Notes: generated by a model from the letters alone, not told the origin. A stretch of 64,000 nucleotides of DNA from Phallusia mammillata (GCA_965637545.1 OZ281497.1:20894001-20958000), one strand, 5' to 3'. Positions 26 to 63,276 are shown, counted from the stretch's first letter. Numbers and translations are program-made.

Positions 26-2338
26 CAACACAAATAGTTCCATTGCCAAAATAACCCAAGTTACAGGAGCAAGTAAAGGTTCCTTGTTTGTTGGTGCATG
101 CTGCTTTTTCGTGGCAATTATGAATGCCGAGGGAACATTCGTCAATGTCTAAAATGATACATATTTTGTAGCAAGTTAAACAGTCTCCGAGCATTGGTAA
201 CATGAAAAAATATACAATTTTTTAACATAAAATCAAACAAATATTTTGTATTCAGCAAATATTGTGATATCATGCACTGCATGGGCTTTAAACTGTTGCG
301 TAATTGTATCTTCATGACAACTCTCTTGTACGTATTAATAGTTGATATTGTTTGTGACGTTTGGGAATGTTACCAAATTTCGATAAACTTTTCTGTTTTA
401 CAAACTAAGAATGTAATTATGCATGTTCGTATTGGTCGCAAGAAATCACAATTCTTTTAAGAAGATTTTGGTCGCGACAACTAAAAACGGTTGTGCAGAA
501 TTGCCTTAAGCCGCTTCCTTCAAGAAGTTATTGGCAAAGTGCACTTGCCCAAAGCATTTTTATCGGTTTTATATGCTTAATTGTAAAAAAATCGGTCAAA
601 GAGATCTGAAAACTCAAAATGGGCGAGTAAACAAAATGTAGGAATTACCGAGGCAGTCAGAACCAATAAGTTGAAAACCAGCTCCGCAAACATCACTAGT
701 TGTCGCTGGAGAGTTAGTAGGTTCAGCCACAAATGGCCCTGCAAAAAAACACAGATAGGACGTTAACTATAGTTTTTTATGACAATAGTCACAAAAAGAT
801 TCAAACTTAAAAAGTTTGCTTCAAATATTACTTTAAGTATCATTGTCCCATTGTCCTCTAATTGTAACTTACTTGTTTGAGCATAAATGGTAGCGGATGA
901 CGTGTTTCCTATGGTATTGTGACCCACGACGATAAGTTTATAAGCAGTTGAAGGCTTTAGAAAAGAAAATCCCGCTTTTCCTGCTATGTGCTGCTCGTAG
1001 GAAGTATCATCACCAACAAGAAACGCATTGGAAAATACGACGTTTGCTGGGTCCCAAGCAAAGCTCAAACCAGAGCTCCCAGTCCAAGTTACCCGAAGGT
1101 TGCTAATGACTGGTTGTTCAACTAAAATTGCAAATATGTGATATATTTCATATGCTTATATGATATATTTCAGATTTGAATACCACCAAATGCTTTGTAC
1201 AAACAGATGCTGAACCAGAGCTAAAGAAAATCAGATTAATTGTAAATTTCTTTTTTTACTTTATTTTTAGATTGCATTTCGTTACCGTTCAGATAACGAA
1301 ATGCAGTTTCGTTTGTACCTTAGTAAAACAAGAATAAAAAGTGTTTTCTTATTCAAAGAGTTAGATCTATACAGATTGTTTTTAAAATAACTCACCAATG
1401 TTAAGATCTAAATAGGCATGATCCGCGTAACAGACACCCCTACCAAAACAGGGGTAGTCACCGCAATGACCTGTAAAATGCAACCAGTTGAAACCAAATC
1501 TGCTCATGCCTAAAAAGTGTTCATATGCTTACGTGTGCAGGTAATACCATCGCCTACAAAGCATACGTCGCATTTGCAGATGACACCGCCCTCTGTACTA
1601 TTGCACGTTGCGTTGTCGCCACAACTGCCACAATCAGTTGTATTTGCCGGCGGAATAGCTGGATAGGTTGGAGCAGGAACTAAAATATACGGTTTTATGT
1701 GGTAAAATTATGGCACAAAATTTAGGTTTAAACAGTTATTTAGGTTAAAATTAAAAAAAAATAGTTTTAGGTTTAAACAGTAGGTTTAAACATGTACATT
1801 TCTAAAATCGTAAAATCGTAAAAAAAACAGCTACAGGTAAAAAATGCAAATTTTGGCTAAATTCGCCATACCGAAAGCACGAGAAATACCAGGGTTAAAT
1901 TGCTGACCACAGAGTTACACTAGTTTAGTCCACGCACGGCTTCTCTAACAACTGAAAGTTTAGTTTGTTTCTACTATTATCTACAAAGATGTCGACAAAC
2001 ACCCTCGATTTCGTTCATCATTCCAAACAAGAACCTTTTTACCCAAAAGTAATGGAGGTATAGTAACAAAGTGTAACATATGATACTTCTTCTGAACTTA
2101 CGAGTTCTGGCAGTAAAATTCTTTACCGCAGACAAGGGGAAATTGCTGGCTTTCAATACCATCACATATTCGGTGTCCGGCTGGAGGTAAATGTAAGCAA
2201 CCTGTGTTTTGCCGTCAAAACCGTATTCCACATTTGGAATTGATGAGTAAATAAATGCCGCGTTGCTGACAGTCCAGCCGAAGAACAAACTATTGTGTGT
2301 TCTCCATAGCAGTTGAATGTCATGAATTACTGGGACAT
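26..2338 (-). CDS. EFG-1: partial EGF/FN3 paralog (FN3-EGF-Cys3-FN3-linker-cbEGF), continues off the left edge; 5' exons not found
   Basis: Open phase-1 exons with AG/GT borders: 2338-2102 (FN3, [17 protein letters not shown]...), 1679-1533 (EGF with extra Cys, [14 protein letters not shown]), 1470-1396 ([13 protein letters not shown]), 1121-873 (FN3), 738-649 ([12 protein letters not shown]), 148-26 ([12 protein letters not shown]...). Exon lengths are identical to those of EFG-2. Confidence 0.8.
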
Positions 2339-4387: not shown

Positions 4388-4901
4388 TGACATACAAACA
4401 ATCGTAGTTCAAAGTGTGGACCATACACAAATTTTCTTGCAGTTTTTTACCACGATTAGTATCACAGCAATATTTATAGCGACTAAGTTATGCCCACATT
4501 TATAGTTGATTAGTTTGTTTCAAAAAGGAACAGGCAAAAACATCTCACTACCATTTGACCGACCCCCTAAAATTGGTCTCCAAAGTTTTTAAATGAAGAA
4601 AATTTTCCGTACACTTTTCGGTTAAAGCATTTGAAAGTGTGATTGGGGTTTCTATTTCAAGAGGGCTATAGACAGCGAATATACGTTATTTACACAATTG
4701 TTGCTTGTCACAAAATCTCGCCAAGCGCCAAAAATGTTTTATGGTCCACAAGGACGGTAACAATCTTGCCACTTTTGAAATTCGTTTTTCCACTCGTTGT
4801 ATGCCTCACGGTATTCCCTGCATTACATAAACATGATTATCCTACACCAATTGAAACACCATACTAAAAAACAAATATTCGGTCAAACAAATAAGGTAGA
4901 G

Positions 4902-5094
4902 CTAATCACACAAGAATTCACAGACATGCCTGTTAATTTCCGAAAAGTGACGCAACGGAGCATAGGCTTTTACTGTGATAATAATTGCTGACTCAGCAAA
5001 TTGCTGAGCGATTATTGCCATAGTAAAAGCCTATGCTCCGTTGCGCCACCTTTTGGAAATTAACAGGCCTGTTTGTGAGTTCTTGTGTTAGTAG
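4902..5094. mobile_element. Palindromic (foldback) MITE
   Basis: Long imperfect inverted arms around a central TGCTGACTCAGCA (4986-4998). Related element at 46111-46363. Confidence 0.65.
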
Positions 5095-5225
5095 ATTTTA
5101 CAACAAATAATGCAAAACCGCTGTATAGCTTCTGGCTAATATGCAACCAACAATTTAAATAAAGCTCGTATAGTCCCAAACGTTTGACCAAGTAGATCCA
5201 GAAGAATAAAACAAGGGCTGCAAAC

Positions 5226-8200
5226 CTACCCCTTTGAAGGATTTTGTTCACAGTCTCGTGGGCCAGTTGTCGATGTTGGGTTAGGGGTTGTAAAGGGTCT
5301 GTCGGTCGTTGGCAAAACAGTTTGGGCAGTGGTAGATGTACCTAGATTAAACGTAAAATGCAAGTCTAACCAGCTCAAAACAATACGTCAGTAAAAAAGG
5401 CCATTATAATCTACAGTTGCAAGTCGGGCACGGCTTTTCGGGTCGGGTTTGGTCCGGCAAATTGTTAGGATCTATTAAACCAGCTGAATTCGGGTCTGAC
5501 TTTACATTCAAAAAAACATTTGTGTCACAATTTCACGTTGGTAAATCAAACTTTAGGACAAATTCGATCTTATACCTTTGTATTCGTGTCGAGTTGGGCT
5601 TTTTGTTCCCTAGTGCAAGCCTTGTATAGTCGTAAAAAATATTTTTACCCAACAATTCCACATGACAATATGATATCAAAACGCAGTGTTACCTGTGAAA
5701 AAAGTGTAACTAGCTGAATAGTTTGTGGGAGCATATTCCGGTTTGAATGTAAGGGTGTAAACAGTATCAGACTTCAAACTGCCGAACGTTGCTTCCTTGT
5801 CATGGTAGCGAGAATATATTGCTACAAGTTGATCTCTTTCGTATAATTCCAGGATGTATGTATAATCAACATAAGATGGAATCACTTTCTTCCAGGCAAT
5901 AGTGATATAATCTGGTCCTCTTATTTCGTTTGTTACGACCAACGCAGGATCACCTTCAATGGAGATATATGACTATAAAGTCACCAATTCATACGCTTTG
6001 TTGATCATGTATTGCTACAAAGCGTTTCCGTAAAGCATTTAATGGAGAGTACCTGGACAAACCCCGTACAAACAGTAACACGAGGTTCCGTATTTGTTTT
6101 GATCGCAGTAGCCTCCTACACCACATAAAGAATATGTGGAGGTTTCACATAGACCTGCAATAAGTAAAGACAAAAATATTAACATGTTGTTAAACATTTC
6201 GCACTGCTTAAGATCTCACCAACACAAATAGTTCCATTGCCAAAATAACCAAAATTGCATGAGCAAGTAAAGGTTCCTCGTTTGTTGGTGCATACTGCCC
6301 TTTCGTGACAATTATGAATGCCGAGTGAACATTCGTCAATATCTGAAATTAAACACGTTTTATTTGAAATAAAACCATCGTCTGTGCATATTGAAATAGG
6401 AAAGAAGCAAAATATTGTTTGCAACAAAAACAATGATTCAAGTAGTTTTTAATGGTATCATGTACACTTTATAAGTTAATTTTTCTGGACTTGCGACGCA
6501 CCAGCAAATAAAAGGAAATGAGGAAAAACAAATAAAAGGTAATGAGGAAAACCAAGATTAATGCCCGCCAAGCGACGCCCCAGACACGCGCTGATCACGC
6601 ACGTGCTGCATGGGCTGCATTTTCGATCAAAAACGTAATTTAACGTCAATACACACGCTACGCAAAACGTCTTTGGACGTACATATACGTCAACCGCACT
6701 GAAAGTGTTAACCTACGTTTTATGAGATAACCTAAGTTCAGCCATGAAACGGAACTATTCTGCGACGCCCTTGGAAGATTGAAACAACACATCAGGGCGT
6801 CGCGGCGCACAGTTTGAGAACTACTGCTCTAAGGTAACAAAAATGTTTAAAGAGTTACAAAAAACTCAAAATATGTAAACAAAAAATTGGAATTACCGAC
6901 GCAGTCAGAACCAATCAGTTGAAAACCAGCTCCACATACGTCACTAGTAGTCGCTGGAGAGTTAGTAGGTTCATCCACAAATGGCCCTGCAAACAAAACA
7001 ACACATAAGACGTTAAGAACAAGTCAAAAAGATTTAAACTTAAATAGTTTGCTTCAAATATTACTTTTTTTATCTAAAGTTTCAATAACCTTCAAGTTTG
7101 ACTTACTTGTTTGAGCTAAAATGCTAGCGGATGACGTGTTTCCTATGGTATTGTAACCCACGACGGTAAGTTTATAAGTTGTTGAAGGCTTTAGGAAAGA
7201 AAATCCCGCTGTACCAGCTATGTGCTGCTCGTAAGAAGTATCATCACCGACCAGAAACGCATTGGAAAATACGACGTTTGCTGCGTCCCATGCAAAACTT
7301 AAACCAGAGCTTCCAGTCCAAGTTACCCGAAGATTATTTATGGTCGGTTGTTCAGCTGAAAGTACAGATACGGAATGTGTTGTTACCCGGCATATTTCAT
7401 AAACTTTCATTTTTATTCAAATGCCACACTACCCAAATGATCTGGAAATTTCTTTTAATTACTTTTATACTTTTTTAATTGCATTTATATTGGTCGTATT
7501 AATTACAAACGGCGGTTGCATTTGTACCTTAAAGCATGAAGAGTGTTTTCTTAATCAAAGATTCAAAGCTATACAGATTGTTCGTTTTTTTCAAAAAAAA
7601 AAGAAACTTACTAATGTTAAGATCTCTGTAAGTATGATCCCCGTAGCAGACACCCAAAGAAAAGCAAGGATCGTCACCGCAATGCCCTGTACAATGCAAC
7701 TAGGTAAAAACAAAAGCTCTTTTTTTGCTTAAAAAGTGTTCATATGCTTACGTGTACAAGTAATACCATCACCAACAAAACACTCGGTGCATTTGCAGGT
7801 GAAACCACCCTCTGTACTGTTGCAGATTGAGTTGATGGCACAATTACCACAATCAGTAGTATTTACTATCGGATTAACTGGATAGGTTGGAGCAGGGACT
7901 GAAAGTCAGAAATCCACAGTCATTGTATGGGTGTCATAAAAAATACAGGGTTAAATATATAAAACTGTATGATGATGTATGAAATCGTACATTAGTGTCC
8001 AAGCAAAAACTAAGCTAGGTGCCTATAGGCAAAATTTGATTAATTCGCCCCACAAAAGCATGAGAAATACCAGCATAAATTGCAGATACTAGAGTCACAC
8101 TATTTTGGTCCAGATACGGCGTCTCTAACCAATGAAAGTTCTGTTTGTTCCTACTATTGTCTCCATATATATCAACAACACTCTCAATTTCTTGCATCAT

Positions 8201-10289
8201 TCCAAACAACTATTTTTGTACCCAAACGAAATGAAAGTCCATTAAAAACAAGTGTAACATGTGATAATCCTTCTGAACTTACGAGTTCTGGCAGTAAAAT
8301 TCTTTTCCGCAGACAAGGGGTAATTACTGACTCTCAATACCATCACATATTCGGTGTCTGGCTGGAGGTAAATGTAAGCAACCTGTGTTTTGCCGGCAAC
8401 ACCATATGCCCCGCTTGGAATTGATGAGGAAACAAAGAGAGCGTTGCTGACAGTCCAGCCGAAGAACAAACTATTATGTGTTCTCCATAGCAGTTGAATG
8501 TCATGAATTACTGGGACATCTGAAACCACAGCGACAAACAGTTAAACTCAATATCGGTTGCTTTAAGTCTCTCGACTGTAAGGTATATATTTTAGGTTTA
8601 GGAGACACACTATCATTACCGATTTGTAGTATTATATATGTATTTGTATTTTGCGATTTTGTATCTTTCGTACAAAAAGTGTGCATTGCAAATTTATTTC
8701 GAAATGACATTTAAAAATTAAAAAAAATGTAATTTATTTCAAAATTTTTTTGAGATTTAAAAAAAAATTCTATAGTTTATTTATATTGTTGTATATAAAC
8801 TGTATGTAATATATTATAAATCACGAATCATCAGATATCGAATCAGTACGAGAGGTGAAGAACAAACTCCAGGTTAAACTTGTTTGTATTTTCTGTGCCA
8901 ACTCTTGCCATGTCGTTTATGAATGCCTTTTATGTGTGTTAAATTTTCCTTAAGGGAACTGAAAACACAACAAAAAAACATTTTTATGTCTCACCGTCGC
9001 TCGTACAAAATTCATCTCGACAAAAGCAAGTGTAACCGTTTGCACCTTCTCTACATTCTCCAATGCTGCTGCAGGACTCGTTACAAAAACCTAAAAAAAC
9101 GTTTTCCATTATATAATTGGCCTGTAAAGTCGATCAAAGCAACTTCGTAAATAACGATGTCAATAACAATGCATGTACTATTACTAGGGTTTTTATACCG
9201 TCCCTATTTCAAAAACATATTTTAAAAGGTCTTAGTGTCCTTGGAAAAAGAAAAATTAGTGTCCTTATTTCGAAGAGTGGTAGGCTACTTGTTTTTGACT
9301 TGAGTCCTTATTTTCTCTCATTTTCAACAGTTACAAGTCAAATTCCTGCTACAAGTAACAGTAAACCTAGACCTGTAGTAAGATGCACGTGGTATTTTCT
9401 ACAAACAAGGAATTGCTGGAACAGATTGTTTTTGGCCAAAATTATGGATCGTATAAATGCAAAGATTTGTTCAAAAACATTCGTTTGTTTCGTGAAAATT
9501 TATTTTTTCGCATGCCCTTATTTTGGGTTCCATGTCAATAGCATTACACAAAAGATTGAATGATAGACAATAAGCTGGATTTTTGCAGATAGACAGTACG
9601 AAGAACAGCAACAAAATCACCTGGTACAAAATAAAGAACATTTTTAAAAAAAAAACAAGCAAGAGATTACTCACCTTTGCAGTCGTAACCGTCTCCAGCA
9701 AACCATTCTTTACATTGACAGTCATAACCCCCAAAAGTGTTGATGCATCTAGCCTCAACATGACAGTTGTGGGTTCCTAGAGCGCATTCGTCAATATCTA
9801 AAAAGACAATTTCAGCGGGTGATCATACTTTTTGTAATACTGTCAACTTTAAGAATGAAATCTAAAGATAATAAACTACATGGTGTTATACTATATAAGC
9901 CCTTACTATCATCGATTTTTTTCTTGTAAAGGGGACATTTTGAAAAAAAAAACTGTTTGGGTGCTGTACAAAACAAATTTGCTTTTAACAACAATTAATT
10001 GTTTGAAGTTGCATGATTTAAATCACATTGCACACCGACAATTTTGAATTTGAAAAACACAAAAATACCGCCACATGTAAACACAGTCTAGCAATGCACA
10101 TTCTTGTGCAATTGGTATTACTTAAAACACAGCAAAATTATTTTGTTACGGTTTAGCGCTGTAAACTTAGGCAATTCCATCGAAAAACACGGCAACTGTT
10201 TAACTCTTTCTAGCGTGTATAACATACAACATACCTTGACCTATAGCAGGCAACATTATCGCAAGAAATATCACGATACCACAATACAT
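5226..10289 (-). CDS. EFG-2: secreted EGF/FN3 modular protein, 12 exons
   Basis: Exons: 10289-10235 (signal [18 protein letters not shown]|G), 9797-9675 cbEGF, 9090-8995 EGF, 8519-8283 FN3, 7898-7752 EGF(7C), 7686-7612 Cys3, 7355-7107 FN3, 6986-6897 linker/half-EGF, 6342-6220 cbEGF, 6154-6053 EGF, 5953-5693 FN3 (AAG acceptor), 5341-5226 Thr/Pro-rich exon ending in TAG. All lengths preserve frame. The 3' end is uncertain. Confidence 0.82.
5412..5629. mobile_element. Degenerate relative of the CAGAGTTGCAAG MITE
   Basis: Starts TACAGTTGCAAGTCGGGCACGGCTTTTCGGGTCGGG, like the 4013 element. The right end is decayed and no TSD is seen. Confidence 0.45.
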
Positions 10290-30595: not shown

Positions 30596-30872
30596 TTTCT
30601 TCACACTTCACACTGCCTATACTCTTACGTACTGAAATAGTCTACGGTTTAGTTTAAGCTCTCGTGAAAGCAAACTGCCCAGGAAGACCGTCATCAGTTT
30701 CACTTCCGTACGTGAGCTTATATCACAACTTCCGTACGTGAGCCATCATCATCACAAACTTTTTTGTTAACATCGATCATTTGTCGCATTTTTGTTCACC
30801 ATCAATTATCTGATTAAAAAGTTTTTTAAAATACAGCTGTCAAAATCAATGTACTCTCAATGTATTTTGGTT

Positions 30873-31503: not shown

Positions 31504-32172
31504 TGTAACATCGTAAATCACTCAACCGTAACCTACGTCACGTCTTATATGGTGTGATTGCACCACAATGCCAGAATCCCCTATGACGTAACAATATCAT
31601 TGTAGTTTATTTCTCTATGCTGTGCCTTTGGCCATTTAGTATTGAGTTTAGTTTGGACCACGTGTAGTTCGTTGGTTGCTGACTTTAATTTGCAAACGTT
31701 AGATAAAGTAATGAAAGTGACTAATTATAATTTGTTTGTCATTAATAGATGGTAATGCTTTATAAACTTAAAAACTCTGACGAAAAGGAATAATGTTGCC
31801 TTTGCAAGGTAAGCTTGATTTGTATTTCAGTTGCCCGATTTGCCGTACATTTGAATTATCGTTTTTCATCTGTGTAGAACGCTTTCTGACGATATCAAAC
31901 TGTGTTTATCTTTGATACCCTGGTCCAAAACTCTGGTAAGCTTTATTTCTGCCGGCTTAAAATTAACTTCTGTTTCCCAGTTTTGAGTGAATGTTCTCTT
32001 TGCAGAAAACCGTGTCTACCGTGAACGTGACGTGTCTACCGTGAACGTGACGTGATTACCGTGTCGTATTGAACCGTGTTGACGTGTAAAATAAATTCAC
32101 GCGTTTCCAGAAATTGGACTTCTCTAGTGTGACGCCAGCGCGGTACCAGGCGCGCAAATTCCTGACGTTACA
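31504..32172 (+). repeat. 5' LTR
   Basis: Direct repeat of 38407-39075, with two substitutions seen on manual comparison. Contains an internal 20-bp tandem repeat (GTGTCTACCGTGAACGTGAC). Confidence 0.97.
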
Positions 32173-32287
32173 TTAAAGTTTTCAGAGTGGCGGAAAATAA
32201 AGTTTTCAGAGTTACCTGGAAATAAAGTTTCCAGAGGCTACTATATACAAGGATTCCAGAGTTATCTATAAAGCGACTTTCGCCACG

Positions 32288-35200: not shown

Positions 35201-38122
35201 CGACGCCTTACTGCAAGGACCCGATTTGGTTAATAGTTTAATCGGTGTCTTGGAACGATTTCGTATGAACAGTATTGCTCTGGTAGCGGACGTGGAAGCA
35301 ATGTTCCACCAGGTCCGCGTTCACAAGTCTGACATTGATGCTTTAAGGTTTTTGTGGTGGCCGGGGGGAGATTTATCCCGAACGCCCACCGTTCATCGTA
35401 TGCTCGTGCACATTTTTGGCGCTACGTCATCGCCCAGCTGCGCCACATTCTGCTTGCGTGAAACCGCCGAGCAGTTTGGGAAAATGTTTGATAAAGATGT
35501 TGGGGACATCGTCCGCAATGATTTTTACGTAGACGATTGTTTGACGTCAGCCGAAACAGTCGAGCGCGCCACAGAGTTGGTCACGCAACTACGTGCCTTG
35601 CTGAAGAAGGGAGGATTTCGCCTGACCAAATGGCTATCTAACAACCAATACGTCATGGATCAAATCCCAGAGGCGGAAAGAGCAAAATCGCTGACCGATG
35701 TAAACTTGGACGCTTCCGTAAAAGAGCGCGTTCTAGGTGTATACTGGCGGGTACAGAGTGACGAATTTGGATTCAGCATAACTGACACGATGCAAGGCAA
35801 GAAATTTACCCGACGCAATATTTTATGTGCTGTTAACACGCTTTATGACCCTTTGGGTTTTGCCGCACCTGTAACTTTGATTGCTAAGGTGTAACAACAA
35901 GAAATAGTCCGAAAGAAGCTGGGGTGGGATGACGAGCTGCCCAAAGACGACATTGACGAATGGCGACGCTGGCTTTCTCAATTGCCGGAGCTCGAGAAGT
36001 TAACACTTCCCCGCTGCTTTAAGCCTCCTACCTTCGGCTCAGTCGCGAAATGCGAGATGCACCATTTTTCGGATGCTTCAACTCAAGGCTATGGAATTGT
36101 GTCCTACCTTCGTCTGAAAGATGTTGATGGACAAGTCCACTGTTCGTTTCTATTCGGAAAATCGAAGGTGACACCCCCGAAAACTGAAAGCATTCCGAGG
36201 CTTGAACTTGCTGCTGCTGTCTTAGCTGTAAAAGCGGACAAATGGCTTCGACGCCAGCTAAAATTTGATAACTGCGAGTCCGTGTTTTGGACAGACAAAG
36301 TATTTACAACCAAAGCAAACGCTTTGGTACGTTTGTTGCCAACAGGTTGGCCGAAATTCATCGACAGACAAGTCCTGATCAATGGAGGCACGTAAGTTCC
36401 CAGCTAAACACCGCCGATGATGCTTCGCGAGGTTTGTCCGTGCACAAGCTCATCCGCTCTCGATGGCTGACTGGTCCAAAGTTTCTCTGGCAAACTAAAG
36501 ATCGATGGCCAACCCCGCCGGAGTTGAAGACTCGGCTTACTCCAGAGTTCCAGCCAGCTGAGCGGAAGAGGATTGTTGTAAACGTTTCTGCACAGTCAGG
36601 GTCAACCGATCGTCTGCTGAATCGATATTCATCTCTTCATAACCTGAAGACAACGGCCGCATGGCTGCTGCGTTTTAAGTCGTTCCTGCGCTCAAAGATT
36701 TCTGTGCCCACCGGCAAGCTGAGCGTGGATGAGCTGGAGGATGCGGAGTTAGAGATAATAAAGTATGTGCAACGCCAGTGTTTCGCTCCTGCTATCGACG
36801 TTTTGTCCAGCGGCGGGCAATCCGATAGGGAGCTGCTAAGGAAATTGAAGAAATCGCCACACGCTAACTCGCTGGCGAAACTTAGCCCCCAGGTTTTTAA
36901 TGGTCTACTTCGAATTGGGGGGAGATTGGAAAAAGCGCCCATTGCCTTTGACGCAAAACACCCGATTATACTGCCGTATGATCACCACCTAACAAGAATG
37001 ATTATTCAGAGCCATCATCAAGAAGTTGGCCATTGTGGAACTGCTCATACCTGGACGTCACTGCGCCAGCGCTTCTGGATTATTAAGGGAGGCGCCGCTG
37101 TGAGGAAGGAACTCAGCAATTACATGCTGTGTCGCAAGAGAACCGTACGACGAGGACAACAGCAAATGGCAGAACTGCCATTCGCCCGATTGAAGCCTGA
37201 TGAGCCACCGTATACTTATGTTGGCATTGACTACTTCGGTCCATTCATGGTGAAGCGAGGAAGAAGTGAAACGAAAAGTTATGGGTGCATATTCACCTGC
37301 TTGACTATGCGAGCTGTACACATCGAGGTGGCACCTGATTTATCCACTGATGCATTTATCAATGCCCTGCGTCGATTCATAGGAAGAAGAGGCAGACCAA
37401 AGGAGATATACAGCGATAACGGCACGAACTTTGTTGGTGCTGAAAGAGTATTACGTGAAGCCCTACAAGGTCTCCAGCAGTCCCGACTAGAATCGTACTT
37501 TAAACGACTGGAAATCAAGTGGAATTTCAATTGTCCCGCTGCTTCTCACATGGGAGGTTCGTGGGAGAGAATGATTAGATCTATTCGTCGCATCCTAAAT
37601 GCGATGCTAACAAGAAACCAAACGATCGGTGCGGACATGTTGCAAACTTTGATGATCGAAGTGGAAAGCATTTTAAATTCCAGACCGTTGACACCGATCA
37701 GCTTCACGTCTACTGAAGATGAGCCACTGTCGCCCAACCATTTGTTGTTGGGGCGTGCTTCTGACAGTGTTCCAGTGGGACTTATCAATCCAAAGGACTG
37801 CTATAGCCGAAGACGATGGAAACAAATCCAACTTCTCGCCGATGATTTCTGGAGAAGATGGTCTCGGGAATATTTGCCCACAATTGCCTTACGCCAAAAG
37901 TGGCCCGACCGACAACGCAATTTCCAACCGGGAGACGTGGTGATGATCGTTGATGAGACTCAGCCTCGACGTCGATGGGAGATTGGACGCGTTCTGCACG
38001 CGTTTCCGGACAAACACGGTGTTGTCCGCCAAGTCAACGTTAAAACGCAATCTGGTTCCACGTACAGACGGCCGATTGCAAAATTGTGCTTGCTCTGCGA
38101 GGCAAGCACCAAATGCCAATAA
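32288..38122 (+). pseudogene. BEL/Pao gag-pol, disrupted
   Basis: Gag with Cys/His knuckles (CPCCKRNHVLERC, CFNCFGYRHTSRVC, CTVRGCNLSHHTLLH), protease FLDQGSD, RT FYVDD, RNase H HFSDAS...TDS region, integrase IYSDNGTNFVGA...GGSWER. Lesions: frameshift near 32400, frameshift near 35160, in-frame TAA at 35892-35894, frameshifting deletion near 36295. Confidence 0.93.
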
Positions 38123-38406
38123 GTGCATCCGACGCATTCAGGCCACGCCGTCGTCGAACTGACCCTGAATTGCGGTGCACAAGATCCTGGTGCTGATGAA
38201 AGAAGAAATATCATGGACGGTATGCTGTTTGCTGCATTACGCATGCCGCACTCTGAAATACGCCAGGTTGGAGCTTTGCTCACCAACGGCGTTTCGCGAC
38301 GCGACTGTTTAGCTTTCGTGTGTGTTTTCGTTGTTTCATGATTCGATGTTTTCTTGGTTTGTTTGTAAATGTGTTTGAAGTGTAAGCACACATTTAGGGG
38401 GGAGAA

Positions 38407-39075
38407 TGTAACATCGTAAATCACTCAACCGTAACCTACGTCACATCTTATATGGTGTGATTGCACCACAATGCCAGAATCCCCTATGACGTAACAATAT
38501 CATTGTAGTTTATTTCTCTATGCTGTGCCTTTGGCCATTTAGTATTGAGTTTAGTTTGGACCACGTGTAGTTCGTTAGTTGCTGACTTTAATTTGCAAAC
38601 GTTAGATAAAGTAATGAAAGTGACTAATTATAATTTGTTTGTCATTAATAGATGGTAATGCTTTATAAACTTAAAAACTCTGACGAAAAGGAATAATGTT
38701 GCCTTTGCAAGGTAAGCTTGATTTGTATTTCAGTTGCCCGATTTGCCGTACATTTGAATTATCGTTTTTCATCTGTGTAGAACGCTTTCTGACGATATCA
38801 AACTGTGTTTATCTTTGATACCCTGGTCCAAAACTCTGGTAAGCTTTATTTCTGCCGGCTTAAAATTAACTTCTGTTTCCCAGTTTTGAGTGAATGTTCT
38901 CTTTGCAGAAAACCGTGTCTACCGTGAACGTGACGTGTCTACCGTGAACGTGACGTGATTACCGTGTCGTATTGAACCGTGTTGACGTGTAAAATAAATT
39001 CACGCGTTTCCAGAAATTGGACTTCTCTAGTGTGACGCCAGCGCGGTACCAGGCGCGCAAATTCCTGACGTTACA
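38407..39075 (+). repeat. 3' LTR
   Basis: Preceded by the polypurine tract and followed by the GGGAA TSD. Confidence 0.97.
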
Positions 39076-40527: not shown

Positions 40528-43500
40528 TTAAGGTTTTAAAAATAATACAGCAGTTGTTGCAAGCGCAAACAAAATGTTAACATTTTTATGAATTATGGTT
40601 AAGGGCGCTCCACTCGTTGTGGATGGGTTGGGGGTTGTGGTTTGGGCACAAGGACAGTTGCTGACCGGTCCAGCTGTAGTAACTGCATCAATTCCTGAAA
40701 CATTTTAGAGAATAAATTTATATCCCATAGATTATATGTAGTCTACTGTTAACTACTAAAAAACACTATTACCACTACAAAACCTTAAGGGGCAAAGTGC
40801 TCACAGAAAAATGAAAATGTTGAAGTAGCATGGATTTGGTCATCTTGAGCAAAACTGATCATTGAAACAAATGCAAACAGCTTTTCTATACAGTTTTGCA
40901 AGCACGCGAAAACACAAATCTGGTGCATGTTGTGCACTTTTGAAATTAGGGAATCAAAGGAATTGTACAATTCTTAAAGCGCATCATAGTGCACAACGTG
41001 ATGGTGCATATCGTTATGCAATCTAAAATTGGGGAGCATAATAAACGTCTAGTGACTAGACTGTAGTTTCATAAGCCAAGATCTTAGATTTCTAAATTAC
41101 AAACTTAATGTCGGAAAAAAGCCTTCCGAGTGCAAACCAAATTTGCGAATCCCAACAGCTTCAATCTTTTTGATTTTGCAACTTCCTAGTATTAAAATTT
41201 TGCTGTTCAAAGAAATCCTTCAAAGCTGCCTAAGCTTTTTTAATATCCAACAGTGGCTTTGGAACACTATATACGGATCTGTTCATAAGTTTAATGGTGA
41301 AAATAACGGCCCAAATAGACGTTAAAAGCGACATGCTTTATTGATCAAACGTTTCGGCAAATGCTCATGCCATCATCAGTGATATGAAGGCCACATCAAT
41401 TGCACCCAGTTATATACACTTTAGTCGCATAAAAGAATGATAAAAAGGTGCGAAACAAGCGTCGCATAAAAACGATAGATAAAAAGGTGCGCAGAAGCGA
41501 GGTGTAAGCCACCTGCAAATGTGTGCGTCTGACCAAACAGGTGCAGAGCAACTACGACATACAATATATTTACAAACAAAGAAACAATAGTAGGACAGCA
41601 CGTCACATGGCATGAGCATTTGCCGAAACGTTTGATCAATAAAGCATGTCGCTTTTAACGTCTATTTGGGCCGTTATTTTCACCATTAAACTTATCAACA
41701 GTGGCTCCTTTAACAAAAAACTACACGCATAAGTGAACACGCAAGCGACGAACACTTAAATGCAAACCTTTACATATCTATATCTTCTCAAAAAACAACG
41801 GTTTGCGAAAAAAAACTTAGATAAAACCAATGTTTGAAGCTTGACCTCCGAGTTAAAGTTTAGAATTACTTGTCTTTATTGCTGTGTTAATCCTACCTGG
41901 GACAAAAGTAATATTAGTCTGTTCGCTGTTTATGCAAGTCGATTGAATTGAGATTGTGTAAGAACTTCCAGGTTTTAGTTTGCCGAAACTAGCCCGTTTG
42001 TTTACAAGCGACGTGTAACCAGTCCGAAGCAATCCATTCTCGTATAGCTTTGCGTTATAACGGAAACCAACGTAGGCCGAAACCACCCTCTTCCAGGAGA
42101 CAGAGATGTAGTTTTGTCCTTTACTGTCCACCTTAACACTTACTGCTGTGTCTCCTGAAAGTAAATCGTAAGAAATGATATGTTTTCAAACGATTTAAAA
42201 ACCATATTTAGTAGTTGGTAAGTTTTTTACAACGACTTTGAAAAAGGCACGGAAAATCGTTTCAGCTTTTTAGTATTTTTAAAAATGTGCCGATAAATTA
42301 TTACGTTAGCTGAAGACATTGCGCACAGTTTTTGACCAGTAAGGTTTTGTCAGTGCAGCTGGTGACAAGGTATTGGTCGCAAAGGATGGTACAGCCATCC
42401 TTCTGTTATCATCCTTCTGTCACCATCTTCTTTGCTACCATCTGCACTGAAGAAACCTTATAGGTCGAAACAGCGTGTCTGCATGCACTTCTGTATTTGT
42501 TTTGTCAAAAACAGATTAAGGGTTTAAGACCATCCGAAACACCTTGACAGTTCGATTTATCCCAGTTAATGCAGGTGCTCCCGTATCTGCCTGTCTCACA
42601 CATCCCGGTGTTGCTGCATATTGAATAAGAAGACGAATCGCATCGACCTGAGTGAAAATTAATTAAGAACAGGAAAATATGTATCGGTTTTGTTTGACCT
42701 TACCTACACATATAACTCCATTGCCAAAATAACCTAAATTACAATTGCAAGTGAAGCTCCCCGGTGTGTTGGTGCATACCGCCTCCTCGTGGCAGTTGTG
42801 AGTGCCCTCGGAACATTCGTTGATATCTGGGAGTTAAACCGTTTTGCTTTAAAATAGTTTCATGCTTCGTAAACGTTTCACGCAAGTCTAGAAGTTTATT
42901 TCGAATAGTGGGCGAAACTAGAGATGTTACAACACAAATATTCATTTGATCATTCAACTTTTTTATGATTTAACAAAAAAATATTTTTGGCCTGTTTTTT
43001 TTCCAAAAATCAAACAATTCTTCATAGGCAGTGTAGCAGTAAAACATCATTGACATAAGAATTGAAAAATAGAACGGTTTGAAAAATGAAAACCTTTATT
43101 TGGTAAAGATAAAAAACGTCGATATATGAGATTTTTATGCGAAGCCATGCTGTAACGTACCCACACAACTCGAATTTTGTGGTCTGAAGCCGGTGCCACA
43201 ATCCCTTGGTGTCTTCATAGTGGTTGAAATCGTCTGGGTGGGCTCTGTGGACCAAATGATAATTATATTTTATCCGCCAAAGAACTAACCTTGACTCTTT
43301 AATCTAACAACAACTCGCCCGTTGTAACTAAGATGCTAGCAGAATTTGAGCCTGCTTGATTGCTGGCTATCACCGTTAGTTTGTATGTGGTTGAAGGGAG
43401 TAAAAAAGAGAATGCTGCTTCTTCGTGCAAGTGCTGCACATACGATGTGTCACCACCGGAGAGAAATGCTTTTGATTCGTCAGCTCTATGGGCACTCCAT

Positions 43501-46500
43501 GCAAAACTTAGCCCCGTTTGTCCAATCCATATTGAGCGTAGGTTGACGATGGATGGTATCGTGTCTGTCAATAAACTATACATAAAATCTTGTTTCATAC
43601 AAAATATGCCCAATTTTTCGTGATAATAGTTTAACGTAACAACATCAAACAAGTTCACTGAAATAACGTTGAGCAAATTTTTTAATTTGACTTTTTAAAA
43701 CCTTGCGTTCATGTAATCCTATACTGCACACCTTAGATAATGTAAGGTCAGATATGTACTTTAACAACCTGACCATGGGCCGAATTTAAAAGGCTGTTTC
43801 ATAGATCCAATACAATTTATTAGTTCTTCGGCGTTTTGAAACGCAACAAAAACGTAATTTGAATCGTTCGCTTGCGGTACGGTTTCATGAAACACACTTC
43901 ATTTAATTATCGAAAGCTTCGACAGCCACAGATGTTTCAATTAAAAAGGCCACATTGGGTTGCAGGTTGAAAACTTATGTGTAAACTGCCAATAATAAAA
44001 GCAAGAGTTTCATGCATTTATTATACTCTTAGCGTTCAACTTACTTGTGTAAGGAAAACTGTTGGTGGAGGAAAGCACTGGAAAGTCGCAAACCCCTTTT
44101 GAAAAACATGCTTTACCACCGCAATGTCCTATAACATAAACAAACATTTGTTCAATGCATACGAACCTGTTTGACTGCATAGTCAAATAATTAGGCTTTG
44201 AGAAGTTATTTGAGTAAAATTGGTTTGCACCAGGGGTGTGCAACCTGCGGCTCGCGGGCCAAATGCGGCCCTTAAAAAAAGGTTGTGCGGCCCGCGGAGA
44301 CGCTTGAATTTCAAATTGACTGACAAACGAGTCTAACTATTACATATTTTTGAGCAAATTAATGCGCCCGATACTATTTTTCTGCGACCAGGCAATATGT
44401 GACTAGATTCAAATGCGAATTTTAGTTGTAGTTAAGAATATTTGGTAAGCAACAAAGTAAAATCACCTTGTGTTATACATAGGTGCGGCCCGCGATCTAA
44501 TTTTGGCTGTTGTATTTGGCCCGACAGTAACAAAGGTTGCACACCCCTGGTTTACGCGAAGAGTTCGGGACAAAGTGAAAGTGAAATGCGTCTCACATAC
44601 AAGTGTTGATAATGTTTTTTCTAAACCGCGGATGAGTTTGTCTTAAAAGGCCTAGAAACATTGCAAACATGTAACAGCTCGCTGTCTCTAGATTCTAGAC
44701 TCTAGAACAGTGGTTCCCGACCTGGGGTTCGCGGACCCCCAAGGGGTCCGTGAGATAGCTTCAGGGGGTCCGTGGAGGTAAACATTTTTAGTATCATAAA
44801 CCAACAGTAAAATATTTGTAGGTTTCCAAATCGTTTTTACAATCCTGCATACACGTGCAGACTGTTTATCAAACCTTCGGGTCAGGTAAAATTACTTTTT
44901 TTGTGATTGTTATCTCCGTTGTGACATCACAACACACATGAACAATGGAAATTATAGTGCTTTGTTTCAATCTTACACACCAGAAAATCTATCTCTTTGT
45001 TGCCACAGTACAGAACTTCAATGAGATTTAAGGTCTATTGTGAAGGTTGATTAAAATGCTACCCAAAAAGCATAATAACGTATAATGCAAAAAACGAAAA
45101 ACATAGAGAGACTTACGGAAAATTAGGGGTTAAGCAGACATATAAAATTTATAAAAGGGGTCCGTGACTACAAAAAGGTTGGGAACCACTGCTCTAGAAG
45201 TTGTGCGCAGTTATTTAAATCTAAACGGTACAACCTGCCCGGCATTTGCGTTTGTGACCCCAAATCTGAACAGTTTCGTCTTCTTCAACCCAAACTAAAG
45301 TATATATATTTAAAAAATCACTAAAATGTGTCATTTTCACCTCCAAATCAACATTGCGATTCGTCCAATGAAATATTTTGTTTAAACCAAACGTGCAGTA
45401 ATCGTAATGCGGGTAACCTGAAAATGTTCTTATTATGCAATAGACGGTGGATAATTACCTCAAAATGGGTAATTTAACACATTTAGGGGGGAATTAAATC
45501 ATTACGTTTTGGTTCTGTGACGTCAGAGTTTGTGATTTTAGTTTCTTTAAGAGAGATGTAAATAAAGTTTAGATGGTTGTTTTCAGGCTTAATGATATTA
45601 AAAAGCTCAAGAACCACTGCAATACAATCTCTTTAAATGCAATATGCGATGAACAGATGAGTTCGCATGAACTTTACCGCAGTTTTCAGGAAAACGAAAA
45701 GAGAAGTAAATATGAAATTCATCTGGTTGTTTTCAGTGGAAATGATAATAAATGAATAAGAACCACAGCAATACTGTCTCATTAAAACGTAATATGCAAT
45801 AAGCGTGAGTCGACATAATCAATAGTGCAGTTTACATTGCAGTACAACACTTACGTGTGCATTTCAGACCATCCCCTATGAAACAGGTGTTGCATTTGCA
45901 GGTTAACGATACATTCATGCATTGAGCGTTTTGATCGCAGCTGGATGAATCCACACATGAGGATGAGTTTGACGCTGGAGGATTACTCAAAACTGAAACG
46001 AGTGCATGCAAAAATTTCCTTGAAACATGGACCTTTAAAGCAAAGTTCCGCAAACAAAAATTATGGTGTAACACAATAACTGCTTAGCGGGTCAGGATTC
46101 TGGGGAAGATCTACTAACACAGGAACTCACAACACGCCCGGTTTGGCATTTTGCGGTAATTGGCGAATAGGCATTCATGGTGACAATAATTACAAAATGT
46201 TGCAACAAACTTTAACGGAGAATAGGCATTCATGGTGACCAGTATTACAGCATGTTGCAACTTGCTGACTCAGCAATTATTGCAACCATTAGCGCCTATT
46301 CTCCGTTGCGCCACTTACCGGAAATTCCCAAACGGGGCGTGTTGTGAGTTCCTGTGTTAGTAGTTCCACCGGATTCTGGAACAAGGCCAATTCACAAAAC
46401 GACAAATGCGTCATGGGTGTAACTTAGGTAATGAATGCTTTTCAACTCGTTGTCACAGTACAAGTATATGTAGGCCTAAATCAACCTATAAACCACTCGT

Positions 46501-48087
46501 TACAAAACTAATAAATAATTTTTACATAAATAATTACCATCACTCTCACGAGTTTTTGCGATAAGTGTTCTTGTTGTTGTCCCTTGAAAGTTTCTTGCTG
46601 TTATAGTCACTTCATATCGGGTGTCTGGTCTTAAATAAAGAAAAGCAACTTGGCTTGTACCGGAAGCAAAAAGTCGTACACCATCAATGGAAGCTTGTAC
46701 ACGGAAAGCGTTGCTGACATTCCAGGCCACAAACAAACTGTTTGAAGTTTGCCAAAGCACTTTGACGTCACGAATCAATGGTAAATCTACAATTCGTAAC
46801 GAATGTATCATTGCTATTCGACTTTCCATTATTAAAACTCACAGAACTGAGACAACGGCAAAACTTGATTTATAGTCGAAATAAGACACGCTTGGCAAAT
46901 TTGTTGATTTGAGGCAAGTCCATTGCTAAGCATAGCAAATTCCCAATGATGGTTTGATAATAAAGAAACAAATAATAAAAGGAAATAACAGCTATGAGTA
47001 AAAAAATAAGTTAGTTATATTTGGGTAATAAATTATTCATCAGCCACTATCGCTCAGGGAAAGAAGGGCGTTTTGTCAAATATAGGTTTTCGGTCCGAAC
47101 CTTTAAAGGCGCATTCAGTCGTTTATAAGTTTTGTGTAAATTGTAAATTTTGACTTAATCCATGTAAGTTATGTATTCCAGCCCATGGGTCATTAATGAC
47201 GCGCCTGTGTCTGTAAGTCAAACTATGCTTGACATAAAAGGTGATTTATCAGAAAGTTGGAGCGTTCATAAAGCGCAAGATAAACGTATGGTTGGCGGAT
47301 TTCCTAACGCACTGCCCATTCATAATTTTGCTAATCAAAATCCTCACCATATCAATAAAGTCGTGACGAATTGAGTAACGAAGCGACAAAATACCCGAAA
47401 GTATTCCGGGTAAGTATAGCCGAAAAGGAATGTACAATTACTTTTATTTGTCTCACCATTTCTACAGTTTTGCTTGCAGAAACAGGTGTAGCCATTAACT
47501 CCTTCTTTACATTCGCCTCTTAGGGAACATAAGTCATCGCAAACACCTACAGAGTTAGAATGTATATAAATTGTTGTACAAGACGAACGGGGTTTATGTA
47601 TTCATGTTATGGTAACTTATAGACTAGACGTACCTCTGCAGTCAAAACCGTCTCCGACAAACCAGTTTTTACATTGACAAGTGTAACTTCCGTCAGTGTT
47701 AATGCAATTTGCCTCAATGTGACAATTGTGGGTTCCTAACGCGCATTCGTTGACATCTGAAAAATAGCTTTAAAAATGTACCTTTTGAAAGTGCCCAGTT
47801 TGGTTCCGAAAAGTAAAGGCGCATTTTATTCTGTTGTCGTTGCTACCACTAAAATTTAGCTCAAGCATTACCTAAAAATAAGCAGCTATGAAATGTACGT
47901 TTAAAAGGATTTTAATAAACCATTTTACCCTTACAATTCATTTATTTGGAAAACGTTGAAAGGCTTGTGTCATATTTTCAACCAGGGCTGATTAACACAA
48001 GTATTAACACCACTACCAAACGCGGTACGTACCTTGACAAGCAGCAAATGACCACAGGGCAACGATTATAACGAAGTAAACGACCAT
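40528..48087 (-). CDS. EFG-5: EGF/FN3 protein with predicted GPI tail and an alternative stop-containing exon
   Basis: Exons: 48087-48033 ([18 protein letters not shown]|G), 47756-47634, 47546-47457, 46786-46550, 45992-45855, 44128-44045, 43564-43319 (GC donor), 43244-43161, 42826-42704, 42647-42505 (to TGA), 42154-41897, 40694-40528 (...STTSGAPLTIIHKNVNILFALATTAVLFLKP*). Confidence 0.88.
41259..41695 (-). mobile_element. Penelope-like pLTR insertion with an inverted terminal duplication
   Basis: Perfect 89-bp inverted repeat (41285-41373 / 41607-41695), flanking duplication CAACAGTGGCT (41248-41258, 41696-41706), absent at the homologous site of EFG-4 (~25215), and carries a hammerhead core. 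Confidence 0.72.
41344..41383 (-). ncRNA. Minimal type I hammerhead ribozyme motif (Penelope type)
   Basis: Minus strand reads AUCA-CUGAUGA-U-GGCA(UGAGCAUU)UGCC-GAAA-CGUU-UGAU: conserved core, stem II, palindromic stem III (ACGU), and a 4-bp stem I AUCA/UGAU. Confidence 0.68.
44231..44549. mobile_element. hAT/Charlie-type MITE
   Basis: CAGGGGTGTGCAACCT...AGGTTGCACACCCCTG with flanks GTTTGCAC/GTTTACGC (2 mismatches). Confidence 0.82.
44708..45191. mobile_element. hAT/Charlie-type MITE
   Basis: CAGTGGTTCCCGACC...GGTTGGGAACCACTG with a perfect 8-bp TSD, CTCTAGAA. Confidence 0.9.
46111..46363. mobile_element. Palindromic MITE in an EFG-5 intron
   Basis: TIRs CTACTAACACAGGAACTCACAACACGCCC / GGGCGTGTTGTGAGTTCCTGTGTTAGTAG, with TGCTGACTCAGCA at 46263-46275. 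Same family as 4902-5094. Confidence 0.75.

Positions 48088-59957: not shown

Positions 59958-59994
<37 letters not shown>

Positions 59995-63215: not shown

Positions 63216-63276
<61 letters not shown>

What the first reader, a model, noticed from the sequence alone, without database searches (positions are those of the whole stretch)
26..48087. Five-member tandem array of an unrecognised EGF/FN3 cell-surface/secreted protein family built from phase-1 exon modules
Seen: five units with the same exon order (SP-cbEGF-EGF-FN3-EGF7C-Cys3-FN3-linker/half-EGF-cbEGF-EGF-FN3-Thr/GPI), in two subfamilies (EFG-1/2 versus EFG-3/4/5), with open frames in the exons I translated. Established: phase 1-1 exons can be skipped, lost or swapped without frameshift. 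I do not recognise this domain order as any named gene. Inference: a lineage-specific, birth-and-death family of surface proteins. Candidate roles are adhesion/tunic, immune recognition or allorecognition, since EGF-rich polymorphic proteins serve gamete and allorecognition in ascidians.
Basis: partly seen in the sequence, partly recalled or inferred. Interest (0 to 1): 0.72.

Follow-up and report, generated by a model that had tools for sequence, protein, structure and literature searches.

The report
Sea-squirt EGF/FN3 surface-protein gene array
A row of six related sea-squirt genes (five of them in this window) encodes secreted or lipid-anchored proteins built from calcium-binding EGF and fibronectin-III modules; the family is real and I found no description of it, but it is one of many such clusters in this genome and its job is unknown.

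Summary
The array is real. On the minus strand there are four complete genes (U2-U5) and one 5'-truncated gene (U1). A sixth, complete member (U0) lies about 14 kb before the window.

All 45 internal module exons in the window are multiples of 3 and phase 1-1.

Corrections:
- U1 has no SP/cbEGF/EGF exons, and its last four exons lie off the window.
- U4 has lost the 3-Cys exon and 60 nt of the 7-Cys EGF exon, in frame.
- Only U3-U5 end in a GPI-like signal.
- U0-U2 splice the Thr exon (phase 1-2) to an extra tail exon that encodes an aromatic helix plus a cysteine pair, so they are predicted to be secreted.

One RNA contig confirms the U2 EGF-to-FN3 junction exactly. Selection is purifying on every branch (omega 0.23-0.48), including truncated U1, which therefore probably borrows U2's 5' exons.

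The only relatives found are the ectodomains of two tandem adhesion GPCR genes on another chromosome; two protein-library searches with the FN3b exon profile found no family relative. An allorecognition role is not supported. The scan has noted several comparable EGF gene arrays elsewhere in this genome.

The parts
26..2338 (-).
   Evidence: Exons in the window: FN3a 2338-2102, EGF7C 1679-1533, Cys3 1470-1396, FN3b 1121-873, half-EGF 738-649, cbEGF2 148-26. EGFb, FN3c, Thr and tail exons lie at G000:C4:20892590-20893961. There is no SP/cbEGF1/EGFa exon. The branch shows 44 synonymous and 34 nonsynonymous changes, omega about 0.23, p = 1e-10 against neutrality.
4739..10301 (-). U2 (EFG-2), complete 13-exon gene, 586 aa, predicted secreted
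   Evidence: Exons: SP 10301-10235, cbEGF1 9797-9675, EGFa 9090-8995, FN3a 8519-8283, EGF7C 7898-7752, Cys3 7686-7612, FN3b 7355-7107, half 6986-6897, cbEGF2 6342-6220, EGFb 6154-6053, FN3c 5953-5693, Thr 5341-5230 (phase 1-2), tail 4817-4739.
8519..8995 (-). RNA-supported splice junction EGFa to FN3a of U2 (intron 8520-8994)
   Evidence: In run X3 a 151-nt contig lies on 8477-8519 and 8995-9092 and skips 475 nt. The ends read CT..AC on the plus strand, which is GT..AG on the minus strand. This matches the predicted exon edges exactly.
4739..4817 (-). Tail exon of subfamily A: about 25 aa, aromatic residues at heptad a/d spacing, then C-x3-C and a stop
   Evidence: The exon is conserved in U0, U1 and U2 with the same phase-2 acceptor and the same stop position. 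U1 against U2 shows 0 nonsynonymous and 3 synonymous differences.
12838..20295 (-). U3 (EFG-3), complete 12-exon gene, 569 aa, GPI-like C-terminus
   Evidence: Exons: SP 20295-20241, 18743-18621, 18529-18440, 17843-17607, 17274-17131, 16101-16030, 15515-15270, 15193-15110, 14768-14646, 14589-14485, 14078-13821, Thr/GPI 13010-12838.
24629..30595 (-). U4 (EFG-4), 11 exons, 523 aa; Cys3 exon deleted and EGF7C exon shortened by 60 nt, still in frame
   Evidence: Exons: SP 30595-30541, 30265-30143, 30055-29966, 29125-28889, EGF7C remnant 28429-28346, FN3b 27424-27179 (GC donor), 27117-27034, 26626-26504, 26447-26343, 25672-25415, Thr/GPI 24795-24629. Branch omega is about 0.48.
40528..48087 (-). 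U5 (EFG-5), complete 12-exon gene, 569 aa, GPI-like C-terminus
   Evidence: Exons: SP 48087-48033, 47756-47634, 47546-47457, 46786-46550, 45992-45855, 44128-44045, FN3b 43564-43319 (GC donor), 43244-43161, 42826-42704, 42647-42543, 42154-41897, Thr/GPI 40694-40528.
31498..39075 (+). LTR retrotransposon (BEL/Pao type) inserted between U4 and U5; not part of the family
   Evidence: The two 675-bp LTRs (31498-32172 and 38401-39075) are 99.6% identical. The open frames carry DUF1759, RVT_1, rve, Integrase_H2C2 and DUF5641, spread over three reading frames. Observed only.

Best explanation
The window holds five of six tandem paralogues of a sea-squirt gene family. Each mature protein is three repeats of a supermodule: an EGF-type domain, a small cysteine module and an FN3 domain. 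The order is cbEGF-EGF-FN3, then 7-Cys EGF-3-Cys-FN3-half EGF, then cbEGF-EGF-FN3. A threonine-rich, probably O-glycosylated stalk follows.

Subfamily B (U3-U5) ends in a small-residue site, a spacer and a hydrophobic tail of about 14 residues with no cytoplasmic part. It is therefore most likely GPI-anchored on the cell surface.

Subfamily A (U0-U2) splices the stalk exon to an extra last exon that encodes an amphipathic aromatic helix and a cysteine pair. It is therefore most likely secreted, and possibly oligomerised or tethered through that tail.

Because every module exon is phase 1-1, the family grows and shrinks by whole exons without losing frame. The family shares ancestry with the ligand-binding arm of two adhesion GPCR genes on another chromosome.

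What is shown: the gene structures, the domains, the paralogy, purifying selection and one spliced transcript. What is inferred: the localisation, and a role in calcium-dependent extracellular adhesion or ligand binding.
For: - Tandem structure and exon models.
- Signal-peptide exons ending in a phase-1 GT donor in U0 and U2-U5.
- Pfam EGF_3/EGF_CA and fn3 hits.
- FN3c fold.
- The FN3b profile retrieves multi-FN3 proteins.
- C-terminal sequences.
- Tail exon conserved in three paralogues, with matching phase and 0 nonsynonymous changes between U1 and U2.
- Spliced RNA contig at exactly the predicted EGFa/FN3a junction.
- Pairwise dN/dS 0.16-0.40 and branch omega 0.23-0.48.
- Own-genome search finds only the six array members plus two loci on C2.
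- Those C2 loci carry a GPS motif (48.6 bits) and 7tm_2 (34.4 bits). Their phase 1-1 first cbEGF exon is 82% identical to U3's, and the adjoining EGF is 77% identical to U2's.
Against: - Expression evidence is one low-depth contig for one gene. U3-U5 have no transcript evidence here.
- The GPI anchor and the signal peptides are judged by rule, not by a predictor or experiment.
- The Thr-to-tail splice of subfamily A has no RNA support. A stop codon sits inside the donor, so an unspliced end is also possible.
- FN3b is below the Pfam cut-off, and its AlphaFold model is poor (pLDDT 54).
- The spliced full-length protein was never searched, and it is unknown how well the libraries cover tunicates, so orthologues in other sea squirts may exist.
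- Nothing here tests binding or adhesion.
Confidence: 0.72

Rival explanations
1. U2 and U1 form one compound locus. U1 has no first exons of its own and is expressed from U2's promoter, in one of two ways. Either the SP-cbEGF-EGF exons are spliced to U1's ten-exon set instead of U2's (alternative 3' exon sets), or U2's FN3c exon is joined to U1's FN3a exon to give a long read-through protein. This refines the main explanation and does not replace it.
For: - U1 was born truncated or became so: the homology breakpoint lies in intron 3, about 240 nt upstream of FN3a, and no remnant of the 5' exons survives.
- Even so, its branch shows 44 synonymous and 34 nonsynonymous changes (omega about 0.23, p = 1e-10). 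It has no stop in 502 codons, where P is about 0.03 under neutrality.
- All its splice sites are intact, and its FN3c exon carries a 30-nt in-frame insertion.
- U1's first acceptor is only 2.4 kb downstream of U2's stop, on the same strand, and all donors concerned are phase 1.
- U2 has no AATAAA or ATTAAA within 780 nt of its stop, unlike the other five units.
- The Thr and tail exons of both copies are conserved, which fits two alternative ends.
Against: - No read or contig joins U2 to U1. The single reads call covered 4401-10400 and RNA depth was minimal.
- The branch counts rest on parsimony with an outgroup whose dS is near 1.
- An undetected, very divergent first exon for U1 cannot be excluded.
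Confidence: 0.4
2. U1 and U4 are pseudogenes: dead relics of duplication that merely have not yet acquired stops.
For: U1 lacks a start codon, a signal peptide and two domains. U4 lost the Cys3 exon and four cysteines of EGF7C, which leaves an odd cysteine count. U4 has the highest branch omega, 0.48.
Against: Both keep open frames, intact splice sites and a significant excess of synonymous change (U1 p = 1e-10, U4 p = 0.002). U4's losses are exact in-frame events.
Confidence: 0.2
3. The family is a polymorphic self/non-self or gamete-recognition system, as the first reader proposed by analogy with EGF-rich ascidian recognition proteins.
For: - It is a multi-copy family of surface and secreted EGF proteins.
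- In subfamily B the small EGFb exon has pN/pS 3.3 (2 synonymous, 26 nonsynonymous differences summed over three pairs).
- In U2 an allelic patch of 12 differences lies within 109 nt of the FN3c exon.
Against: - Every gene-wide estimate shows purifying selection.
- The EGFb excess is not significant against neutrality, and the three pairs are not independent.
- Only 7 of 586 residues differ between the reference and the two DNA runs in U2.
- The FN3c patch shares states with the paralogues (7 of 12 with U1, 5 of 12 with U0), as gene conversion or an old allele would.
- No ZP, Ig or other domain typical of known ascidian recognition genes was found.
Confidence: 0.07
4. The proteins are free copies of the adhesion-GPCR ectodomain. 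As secreted or GPI-anchored competitors or bridges, they modulate the ligand of the two C2 receptors.
For: The only detectable relatives are those two receptors' ectodomains. They share a distinctive cbEGF signature and the same cbEGF-EGF-FN3 order with phase 1-1 exons.
Against: Similarity is strong only for the first two small modules; the FN3 modules are 33-34% identical, and third-codon positions show an old split. There are no co-expression or binding data.
Confidence: 0.12

Closest known systems
EGF-bearing adhesion GPCRs (EGF-TM7 / ADGRE-like; unclassified Ciona adhesion GPCRs with N-terminal EGF repeats, PMC2396169)
   Same: Two tandem genes at G000:C2:30660000-30700000 start with the same cbEGF-EGF-FN3 module order in phase 1-1 exons. 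Their first cbEGF is 82% identical to U3's, the next EGF is 77% identical to U2's, and their FN3 modules are 33-34% identical.
   Different: The array genes stop after the third FN3 and a Thr stalk. They have no GAIN/GPS and no 7TM region, whereas the C2 genes have both (GPS and 7tm_2) plus four more cbEGF domains.
Tenascins (definition as in PMC11401434)
   Same: Secreted chordate glycoproteins that combine EGF-type and FN3 domains, with FN3 modules in phase 1-1 exons. The subfamily A tail (a heptad-like helix next to cysteines) recalls an assembly region.
   Different: [quoted passage not shown] Here EGF and FN3 alternate, two of the EGFs are calcium-binding, there is no fibrinogen domain, and the helix is C-terminal.
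Ascidian EGF-repeat vitelline-coat proteins (HrVC70 / CiVC57), recalled from memory and not checked here
   Different: As recalled, those are EGF repeats cut from a ZP-domain precursor and are highly polymorphic. Here there are FN3 domains, no ZP domain, purifying selection and modest allelic difference.
Other tandem EGF surface-protein arrays noted by this scan in the same genome (s1-394852, s1-353669, s1-410947 and others)
   Same: The same theme: lineage-specific tandem clusters of modular, often GPI-anchored EGF proteins built from phase-1 exons.
   Different: They are different DNA with different partner domains (EGF rods, Ly6/uPAR, lectin, LCCL). None is reported with the alternating EGF/FN3 triplet plan. 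I did not test these notes.

Membership tests
Calcium-binding EGF domain (Pfam EGF_CA / EGF_3) | Profile match above the curated cut-off; D/N-x-D/N-E/Q-C start; six cysteines; the C-x-[DN]-x4-[FY]-x-C-x-C hydroxylation consensus | tested here: met
   cbEGF1 scores EGF_3 48.7 and EGF_CA 41.4 bits; cbEGF2 scores 50.2 and 43.3 (cut-offs 28.5 and 27). The D-I-D-E-C start needs the G of the preceding exon to complete its first codon. The sequences are shown.
Fibronectin type III domain | fn3 profile match, or a seven-strand beta-sandwich fold matching solved FN3 domains | tested here: met
   FN3a scores 26.9 bits (cut-off 25). FN3c scores 24.7 bits, and its AlphaFold model (pLDDT 79) matches fibronectin's 10th FN3 domain and monobodies at TM 0.74-0.83. 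FN3b scores only 19 bits and its model is poor, but its profile retrieves multi-FN3 proteins down to E = 7.5e-20.
GPI-anchored surface protein | N-terminal signal peptide | tested here: met
   An 18-22 aa hydrophobic first exon starts at an ATG and ends in a phase-1 GT donor in U0 and U2-U5. This was judged by hydropathy rule only.
GPI-anchored surface protein | C-terminal signal: small omega residues, a short polar spacer, a hydrophobic tail of about 12-20 residues, and no cytoplasmic residues | tested here: inconclusive
   U3-U5 end with S-G-A (S-R-A in U3), a spacer of about 9 residues, a hydrophobic stretch of about 14 residues and then 2 residues. That fits by inspection, but no predictor was run. 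U0-U2 have no hydrophobic end, so the feature is not met for subfamily A.
GPI-anchored surface protein | Release by PI-PLC, or a lipid anchor shown chemically | not testable with these tools
   This needs bench work.
Tenascin | C-terminal fibrinogen-related domain and N-terminal assembly domain (PMC11401434) | tested here: not met
   No exon of U3 gives a fibrinogen hit. The models end in a Thr stalk plus a GPI signal or a tail helix, and cbEGF1 follows the signal peptide directly.
Adhesion GPCR | GAIN/GPS motif followed by a secretin-type 7TM region | tested here: not met
   Each array gene ends in a stop before the next gene's signal-peptide exon. None of the 150 scored GPS matches in the genome lies in C4:20864001-20958000 (only 150 of 231 candidates were scored). 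The C2 paralogues do have GPS and 7tm_2.
ZP-domain EGF proteins (uromodulin; VC70-precursor type) | Zona pellucida domain after the EGF repeats | tested here: not met
   No ZP hit in any U3 exon at E <= 1.

The most novel reading that the evidence does not exclude
The array encodes free versions of the ligand-binding arm of the two chromosome-2 adhesion GPCRs: secreted in subfamily A and GPI-anchored in subfamily B. These tune or bridge the receptors' ligand. In addition, U2 and U1 act as one locus, in which a single promoter and three shared 5' exons feed two alternative ten-exon 3' sets, an unusual way to diversify an extracellular protein.
Probability: 0.12. Interest if true: 0.62.

Novelty: new variant of a known kind. 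Interest (0 to 1): 0.4.

Why it matters
If the models hold, this is a sea-squirt protein family that I found described nowhere, with a regular (EGF, small Cys module, FN3) x3 plan. It shows in one place how phase-1 exon modules let genes gain, lose and re-end (GPI anchor or secreted tail) without breaking frame.

Two points go beyond routine annotation. First, a copy that has lost its promoter-proximal exons is still under clear purifying selection, which predicts shared 5' exons with its neighbour. Second, the family is kin to the ectodomain of adhesion GPCRs, which gives a concrete lead to binding partners.

Against that, the domains are ordinary, the function is unknown, and this genome holds many comparable EGF arrays.

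Tried and rejected
- **Word-index protein search with the FN3b alignment:** no hit. This is uninformative, because only proteins of 45-142 aa could be candidates.
- **Exhaustive HMM search with the FN3b profile:** it returned only generic multi-FN3 proteins. Ten hits checked by Pfam had no EGF, and none of the 150 best had an EGF motif or more than 4% Cys.
- **Joined spliced proteins:** Exons were searched one by one by reference. Joining was done only inside scripts, for frame checks, identity and dN/dS.
- **Looking for U1's missing exons:** I tried tBLASTn, an ATG/hydropathy/phase-1 donor scan, the in-frame extension upstream of FN3a, which is not signal-like, and a sensitive BLASTN. Nothing was found.
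- **Treating the stop after U2's Thr exon as the true end:** rejected in favour of a phase-2 donor plus a conserved tail exon, because all three subfamily A copies agree.
- **Small exons (Cys3, half-EGF, SP) against the C2 genes:** no significant match.
- **AlphaFold of FN3b:** too low in confidence to search.
- **RNA runs:** only two of twelve guessed-RNA runs held any words (0.01-0.02). Most of what they laid was intronic high-copy repeat (6480-6826, 9200-9600, 5001-5100), not gene expression.
- **Literature:** no paper describes this architecture in ascidians.
- **Organism:** I did not verify this myself.
Full report
**Setting.** The window is G000:C4:20894001-20958000. All genes of the finding lie on the minus strand.

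**Is the array there?** Yes.
- A self-comparison shows five related DNA units at about 17-2443, 6211-8622, 13751-20785, 25351-30864 and 41695-48560.
tBLASTn places each block in every unit.
- I fixed the exon edges from alignments of the units with their flanks and from a scan for in-frame AG and GT sites.
- All 45 internal module exons in the window are multiples of three, begin and end in phase 1, and carry AG...GT. The FN3b exons of U4 and U5 have a GC donor in an otherwise good consensus, shared by both copies.
- First exons of 18-22 hydrophobic residues, starting at an ATG and ending in a phase-1 donor, precede U2-U5.
- Joined inside a script only, the models give one open frame each: U2 586 aa, U3 569, U4 523 and U5 569.

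**Domains.**
- Pfam places both cbEGF exons in EGF_3/EGF_CA well above the cut-offs, and the 7-Cys exon in EGF_3.
- FN3a is just above the fn3 cut-off, FN3c just below it, and FN3b further below. EGFa has only a weak hEGF hit. EGFb, Cys3 and the half-EGF exon have no hit.
- FN3c folds with pLDDT 79 and matches fibronectin type III domains at TM 0.74-0.83.
- The FN3b profile retrieves multi-FN3 proteins, but its own model is poor.
- The protein is best read as three copies of a supermodule: an EGF domain, a small cysteine module and an FN3 domain.

**Corrections to the observation.**
1. U1 has only the exons from FN3a onward. Homology to U2 ends inside intron 3, about 240 nt upstream of the FN3a exon. 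No signal-peptide, cbEGF1 or EGFa exon lies between it and U2. The open frame upstream of FN3a is not signal-like. Its last four exons lie just before the window.
2. U4 has lost the Cys3 exon and 60 nt of the EGF7C exon. Both losses are in frame and leave an odd number of cysteines.
3. The endings differ between the subfamilies.
   - U3-U5 end with a Thr-rich stretch, small residues (S-G-A or S-R-A), a spacer of about 9 residues and a hydrophobic stretch of about 14 residues followed by two residues. By rule this is a GPI signal.
   - In U0-U2 the Thr exon ends at a phase-2 donor, and the apparent stop codon lies inside that donor.
   - About 400 nt downstream there is a short exon, conserved in all three copies, with a matching phase-2 acceptor and a shared stop.
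   - That exon encodes about 25 residues with aromatic side chains at 4-3-4-3 spacing, then C-x3-C. U1 and U2 differ there by three synonymous changes and no nonsynonymous change.
   - These proteins are therefore predicted to be secreted, not GPI-anchored. No RNA confirms this splice.
4. A sixth, complete 13-exon member (U0, 605 aa) lies at C4:20874108-20880875.

**Expression and alleles.** The run search found two DNA-like runs holding the stretch, and twelve guessed-RNA runs holding almost none of it.
- I laid four runs on 4401-10400. One X3 contig of 151 nt covers 8477-8519 and 8995-9092 and skips 475 nt with GT..AG ends on the minus strand. That is exactly the predicted EGFa-to-FN3a junction of U2.
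- The 11 further letters of that contig are consistent with the cbEGF1-to-EGFa junction.
- So U2 is transcribed and spliced as modelled, at low level in that sample. The other RNA signal lay on intronic high-copy repeats.
- The two DNA runs differ from the reference at 17 exonic positions of U2. These give 7 amino-acid changes, and 12 of the differences cluster in 109 nt of the FN3c exon.
- In that cluster the variant shares 7 of 12 states with U1 and 5 of 12 with U0. This is compatible with gene conversion or an old allele.
- Differences were listed only in exons. I attribute that to contigs of the other haplotype failing the 95% threshold in introns, not to biology.

**Selection.**
- Pairwise dN/dS is 0.16-0.40.
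- Polarised branch counts (synonymous/nonsynonymous) are: U1 44/34, U2 32/40, U3 33/34, U4 27/43 and U5 27/40. These give omega of about 0.23-0.48, and every branch has a significant excess of synonymous change.
- The one exon above 1 is EGFb in subfamily B: pN/pS 3.3, from 2 synonymous and 26 nonsynonymous differences over three non-independent pairs. It is not significant against neutrality.
- That exon has five cysteines, while the following FN3c exon has gained one.
- The result for U1 is the most interesting. A copy without a start, a signal peptide or its first two domains has been kept under constraint, with no stop in 502 codons, all splice sites intact and an in-frame 30-nt insertion.
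- The simplest way for U1 to make a secreted protein is to use U2's 5' exons. U1's first acceptor lies 2.4 kb downstream of U2's stop on the same strand, all relevant donors are phase 1, and U2 alone lacks a poly(A) hexamer within 780 nt of its stop. This is inference; I could not lay reads on that interval.

**Relatives.**
- In the own genome the FN3b and FN3c exons match only the six array members and two loci on contig C2.
- Those loci are two tandem genes. Each begins with a phase 1-1 cbEGF exon (82% identical to U3's, with the same K-x-W-F-x-G-D-G signature), then an EGF (77% identical to U2's) and an FN3.
- They continue with further cbEGF/EGF/FN3 sets and four more cbEGF domains, and end in a GPS motif and a secretin-type 7TM region. 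They are adhesion GPCRs.
- Third-codon identity (0.53, against 0.62-0.65 between the subfamilies) indicates a split older than the A/B split.
- Outside the genome, the FN3b profile found nothing better than generic multi-FN3 proteins among 1.84 billion representatives. None of the 150 best has an EGF motif. The word-index search was blank.
- The full spliced proteins were not searched, by instruction, and tunicate coverage of the libraries is unknown. "No relatives found" is therefore a limited statement.
- Papers on Ciona GPCRs mention unclassified adhesion GPCRs with EGF repeats (PMC2396169). The tenascin literature defines a different architecture (PMC11401434). I found no paper on an alternating EGF/FN3 family in ascidians.

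**How it most likely works.**
- Shown: six paralogues, the modular exon plan, the domains, purifying selection, one spliced transcript, and kinship with adhesion-GPCR ectodomains.
- Inferred: subfamily B is displayed on the cell surface through a GPI anchor on an O-glycosylated stalk.
- Inferred: subfamily A is secreted, and its aromatic helix with a cysteine pair serves oligomerisation or attachment.
- Inferred: both subfamilies act in calcium-dependent extracellular binding or adhesion, possibly towards the same partners as the C2 receptors.
- The allorecognition idea is not supported by the selection and allele data, though it is not excluded.

**Verdict.** The gene family is real and was well observed, with four corrections. 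It is a new arrangement of common domains, and one of several lineage-specific EGF arrays this scan has noted in the same genome on other DNA. Interest is moderate. The testable prediction that truncated U1 shares U2's 5' exons is the part most worth following up.

Noticed in passing
window 31498-39075 (+): A BEL/Pao-type LTR retrotransposon sits between U4 and U5. Its two 675-bp LTRs are 99.6% identical, so the insertion is young. Its gag-like, RT and integrase parts lie in three different reading frames. Observed only.
   Followed up: partly
G000:C2:30660000-30700000 (L004-L008): Two tandem adhesion GPCR genes have an unusually long ectodomain of repeated cbEGF/EGF/FN3 sets plus four cbEGF domains before the GPS and 7TM region. 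They are the array's only detected relatives. The genome holds at least 150 GPS motifs, many of them in tandem clusters.
   Followed up: partly
window 4739-4817 (-) and L009:4141-4485 (+): The tail exon of subfamily A weakly resembles the last repeat of the aromatic-helix C-terminal domain of a neighbouring gene about 14 kb beyond the window (a shared W-K-x3-[QK]-x-W-x-D-C pattern). A shuffle test gave p of about 0.002-0.02. This may be a shared small module.
   Followed up: partly
window 14446-14484, 26304-26342, 42504-42542 (-): In U3-U5 the frame stays open for 12-13 codons past the EGFb donor and ends in a conserved ...[IV]-C-F stop. Another first-reader note (s1-369029) reads this as a secreted isoform made by intron retention. 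At about 85% DNA identity between the copies, the conservation alone proves little.
   Followed up: partly
window 4011-4388, 13208-13532, 23601-23965: A short interspersed repeat (80-92% identical copies) lies downstream of U2, inside the last intron of U3 and downstream of U4. Other high-copy repeats at 6480-6826, 9200-9600 and 5001-5100 show very high contig depth in the DNA runs.
   Followed up: no
window 27179 and 43319 (-): The FN3b exons of U4 and U5 share a GC donor (G|GCGAGT) where U3 has GT. This is probably a functional GC-AG intron inherited by both copies.
   Followed up: no
window 57640-60718 and 61237-64000: This is a 98% identical tandem duplication outside the finding. Other notes of the scan assign it to a VWA/mucin-type gene.
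   Followed up: no
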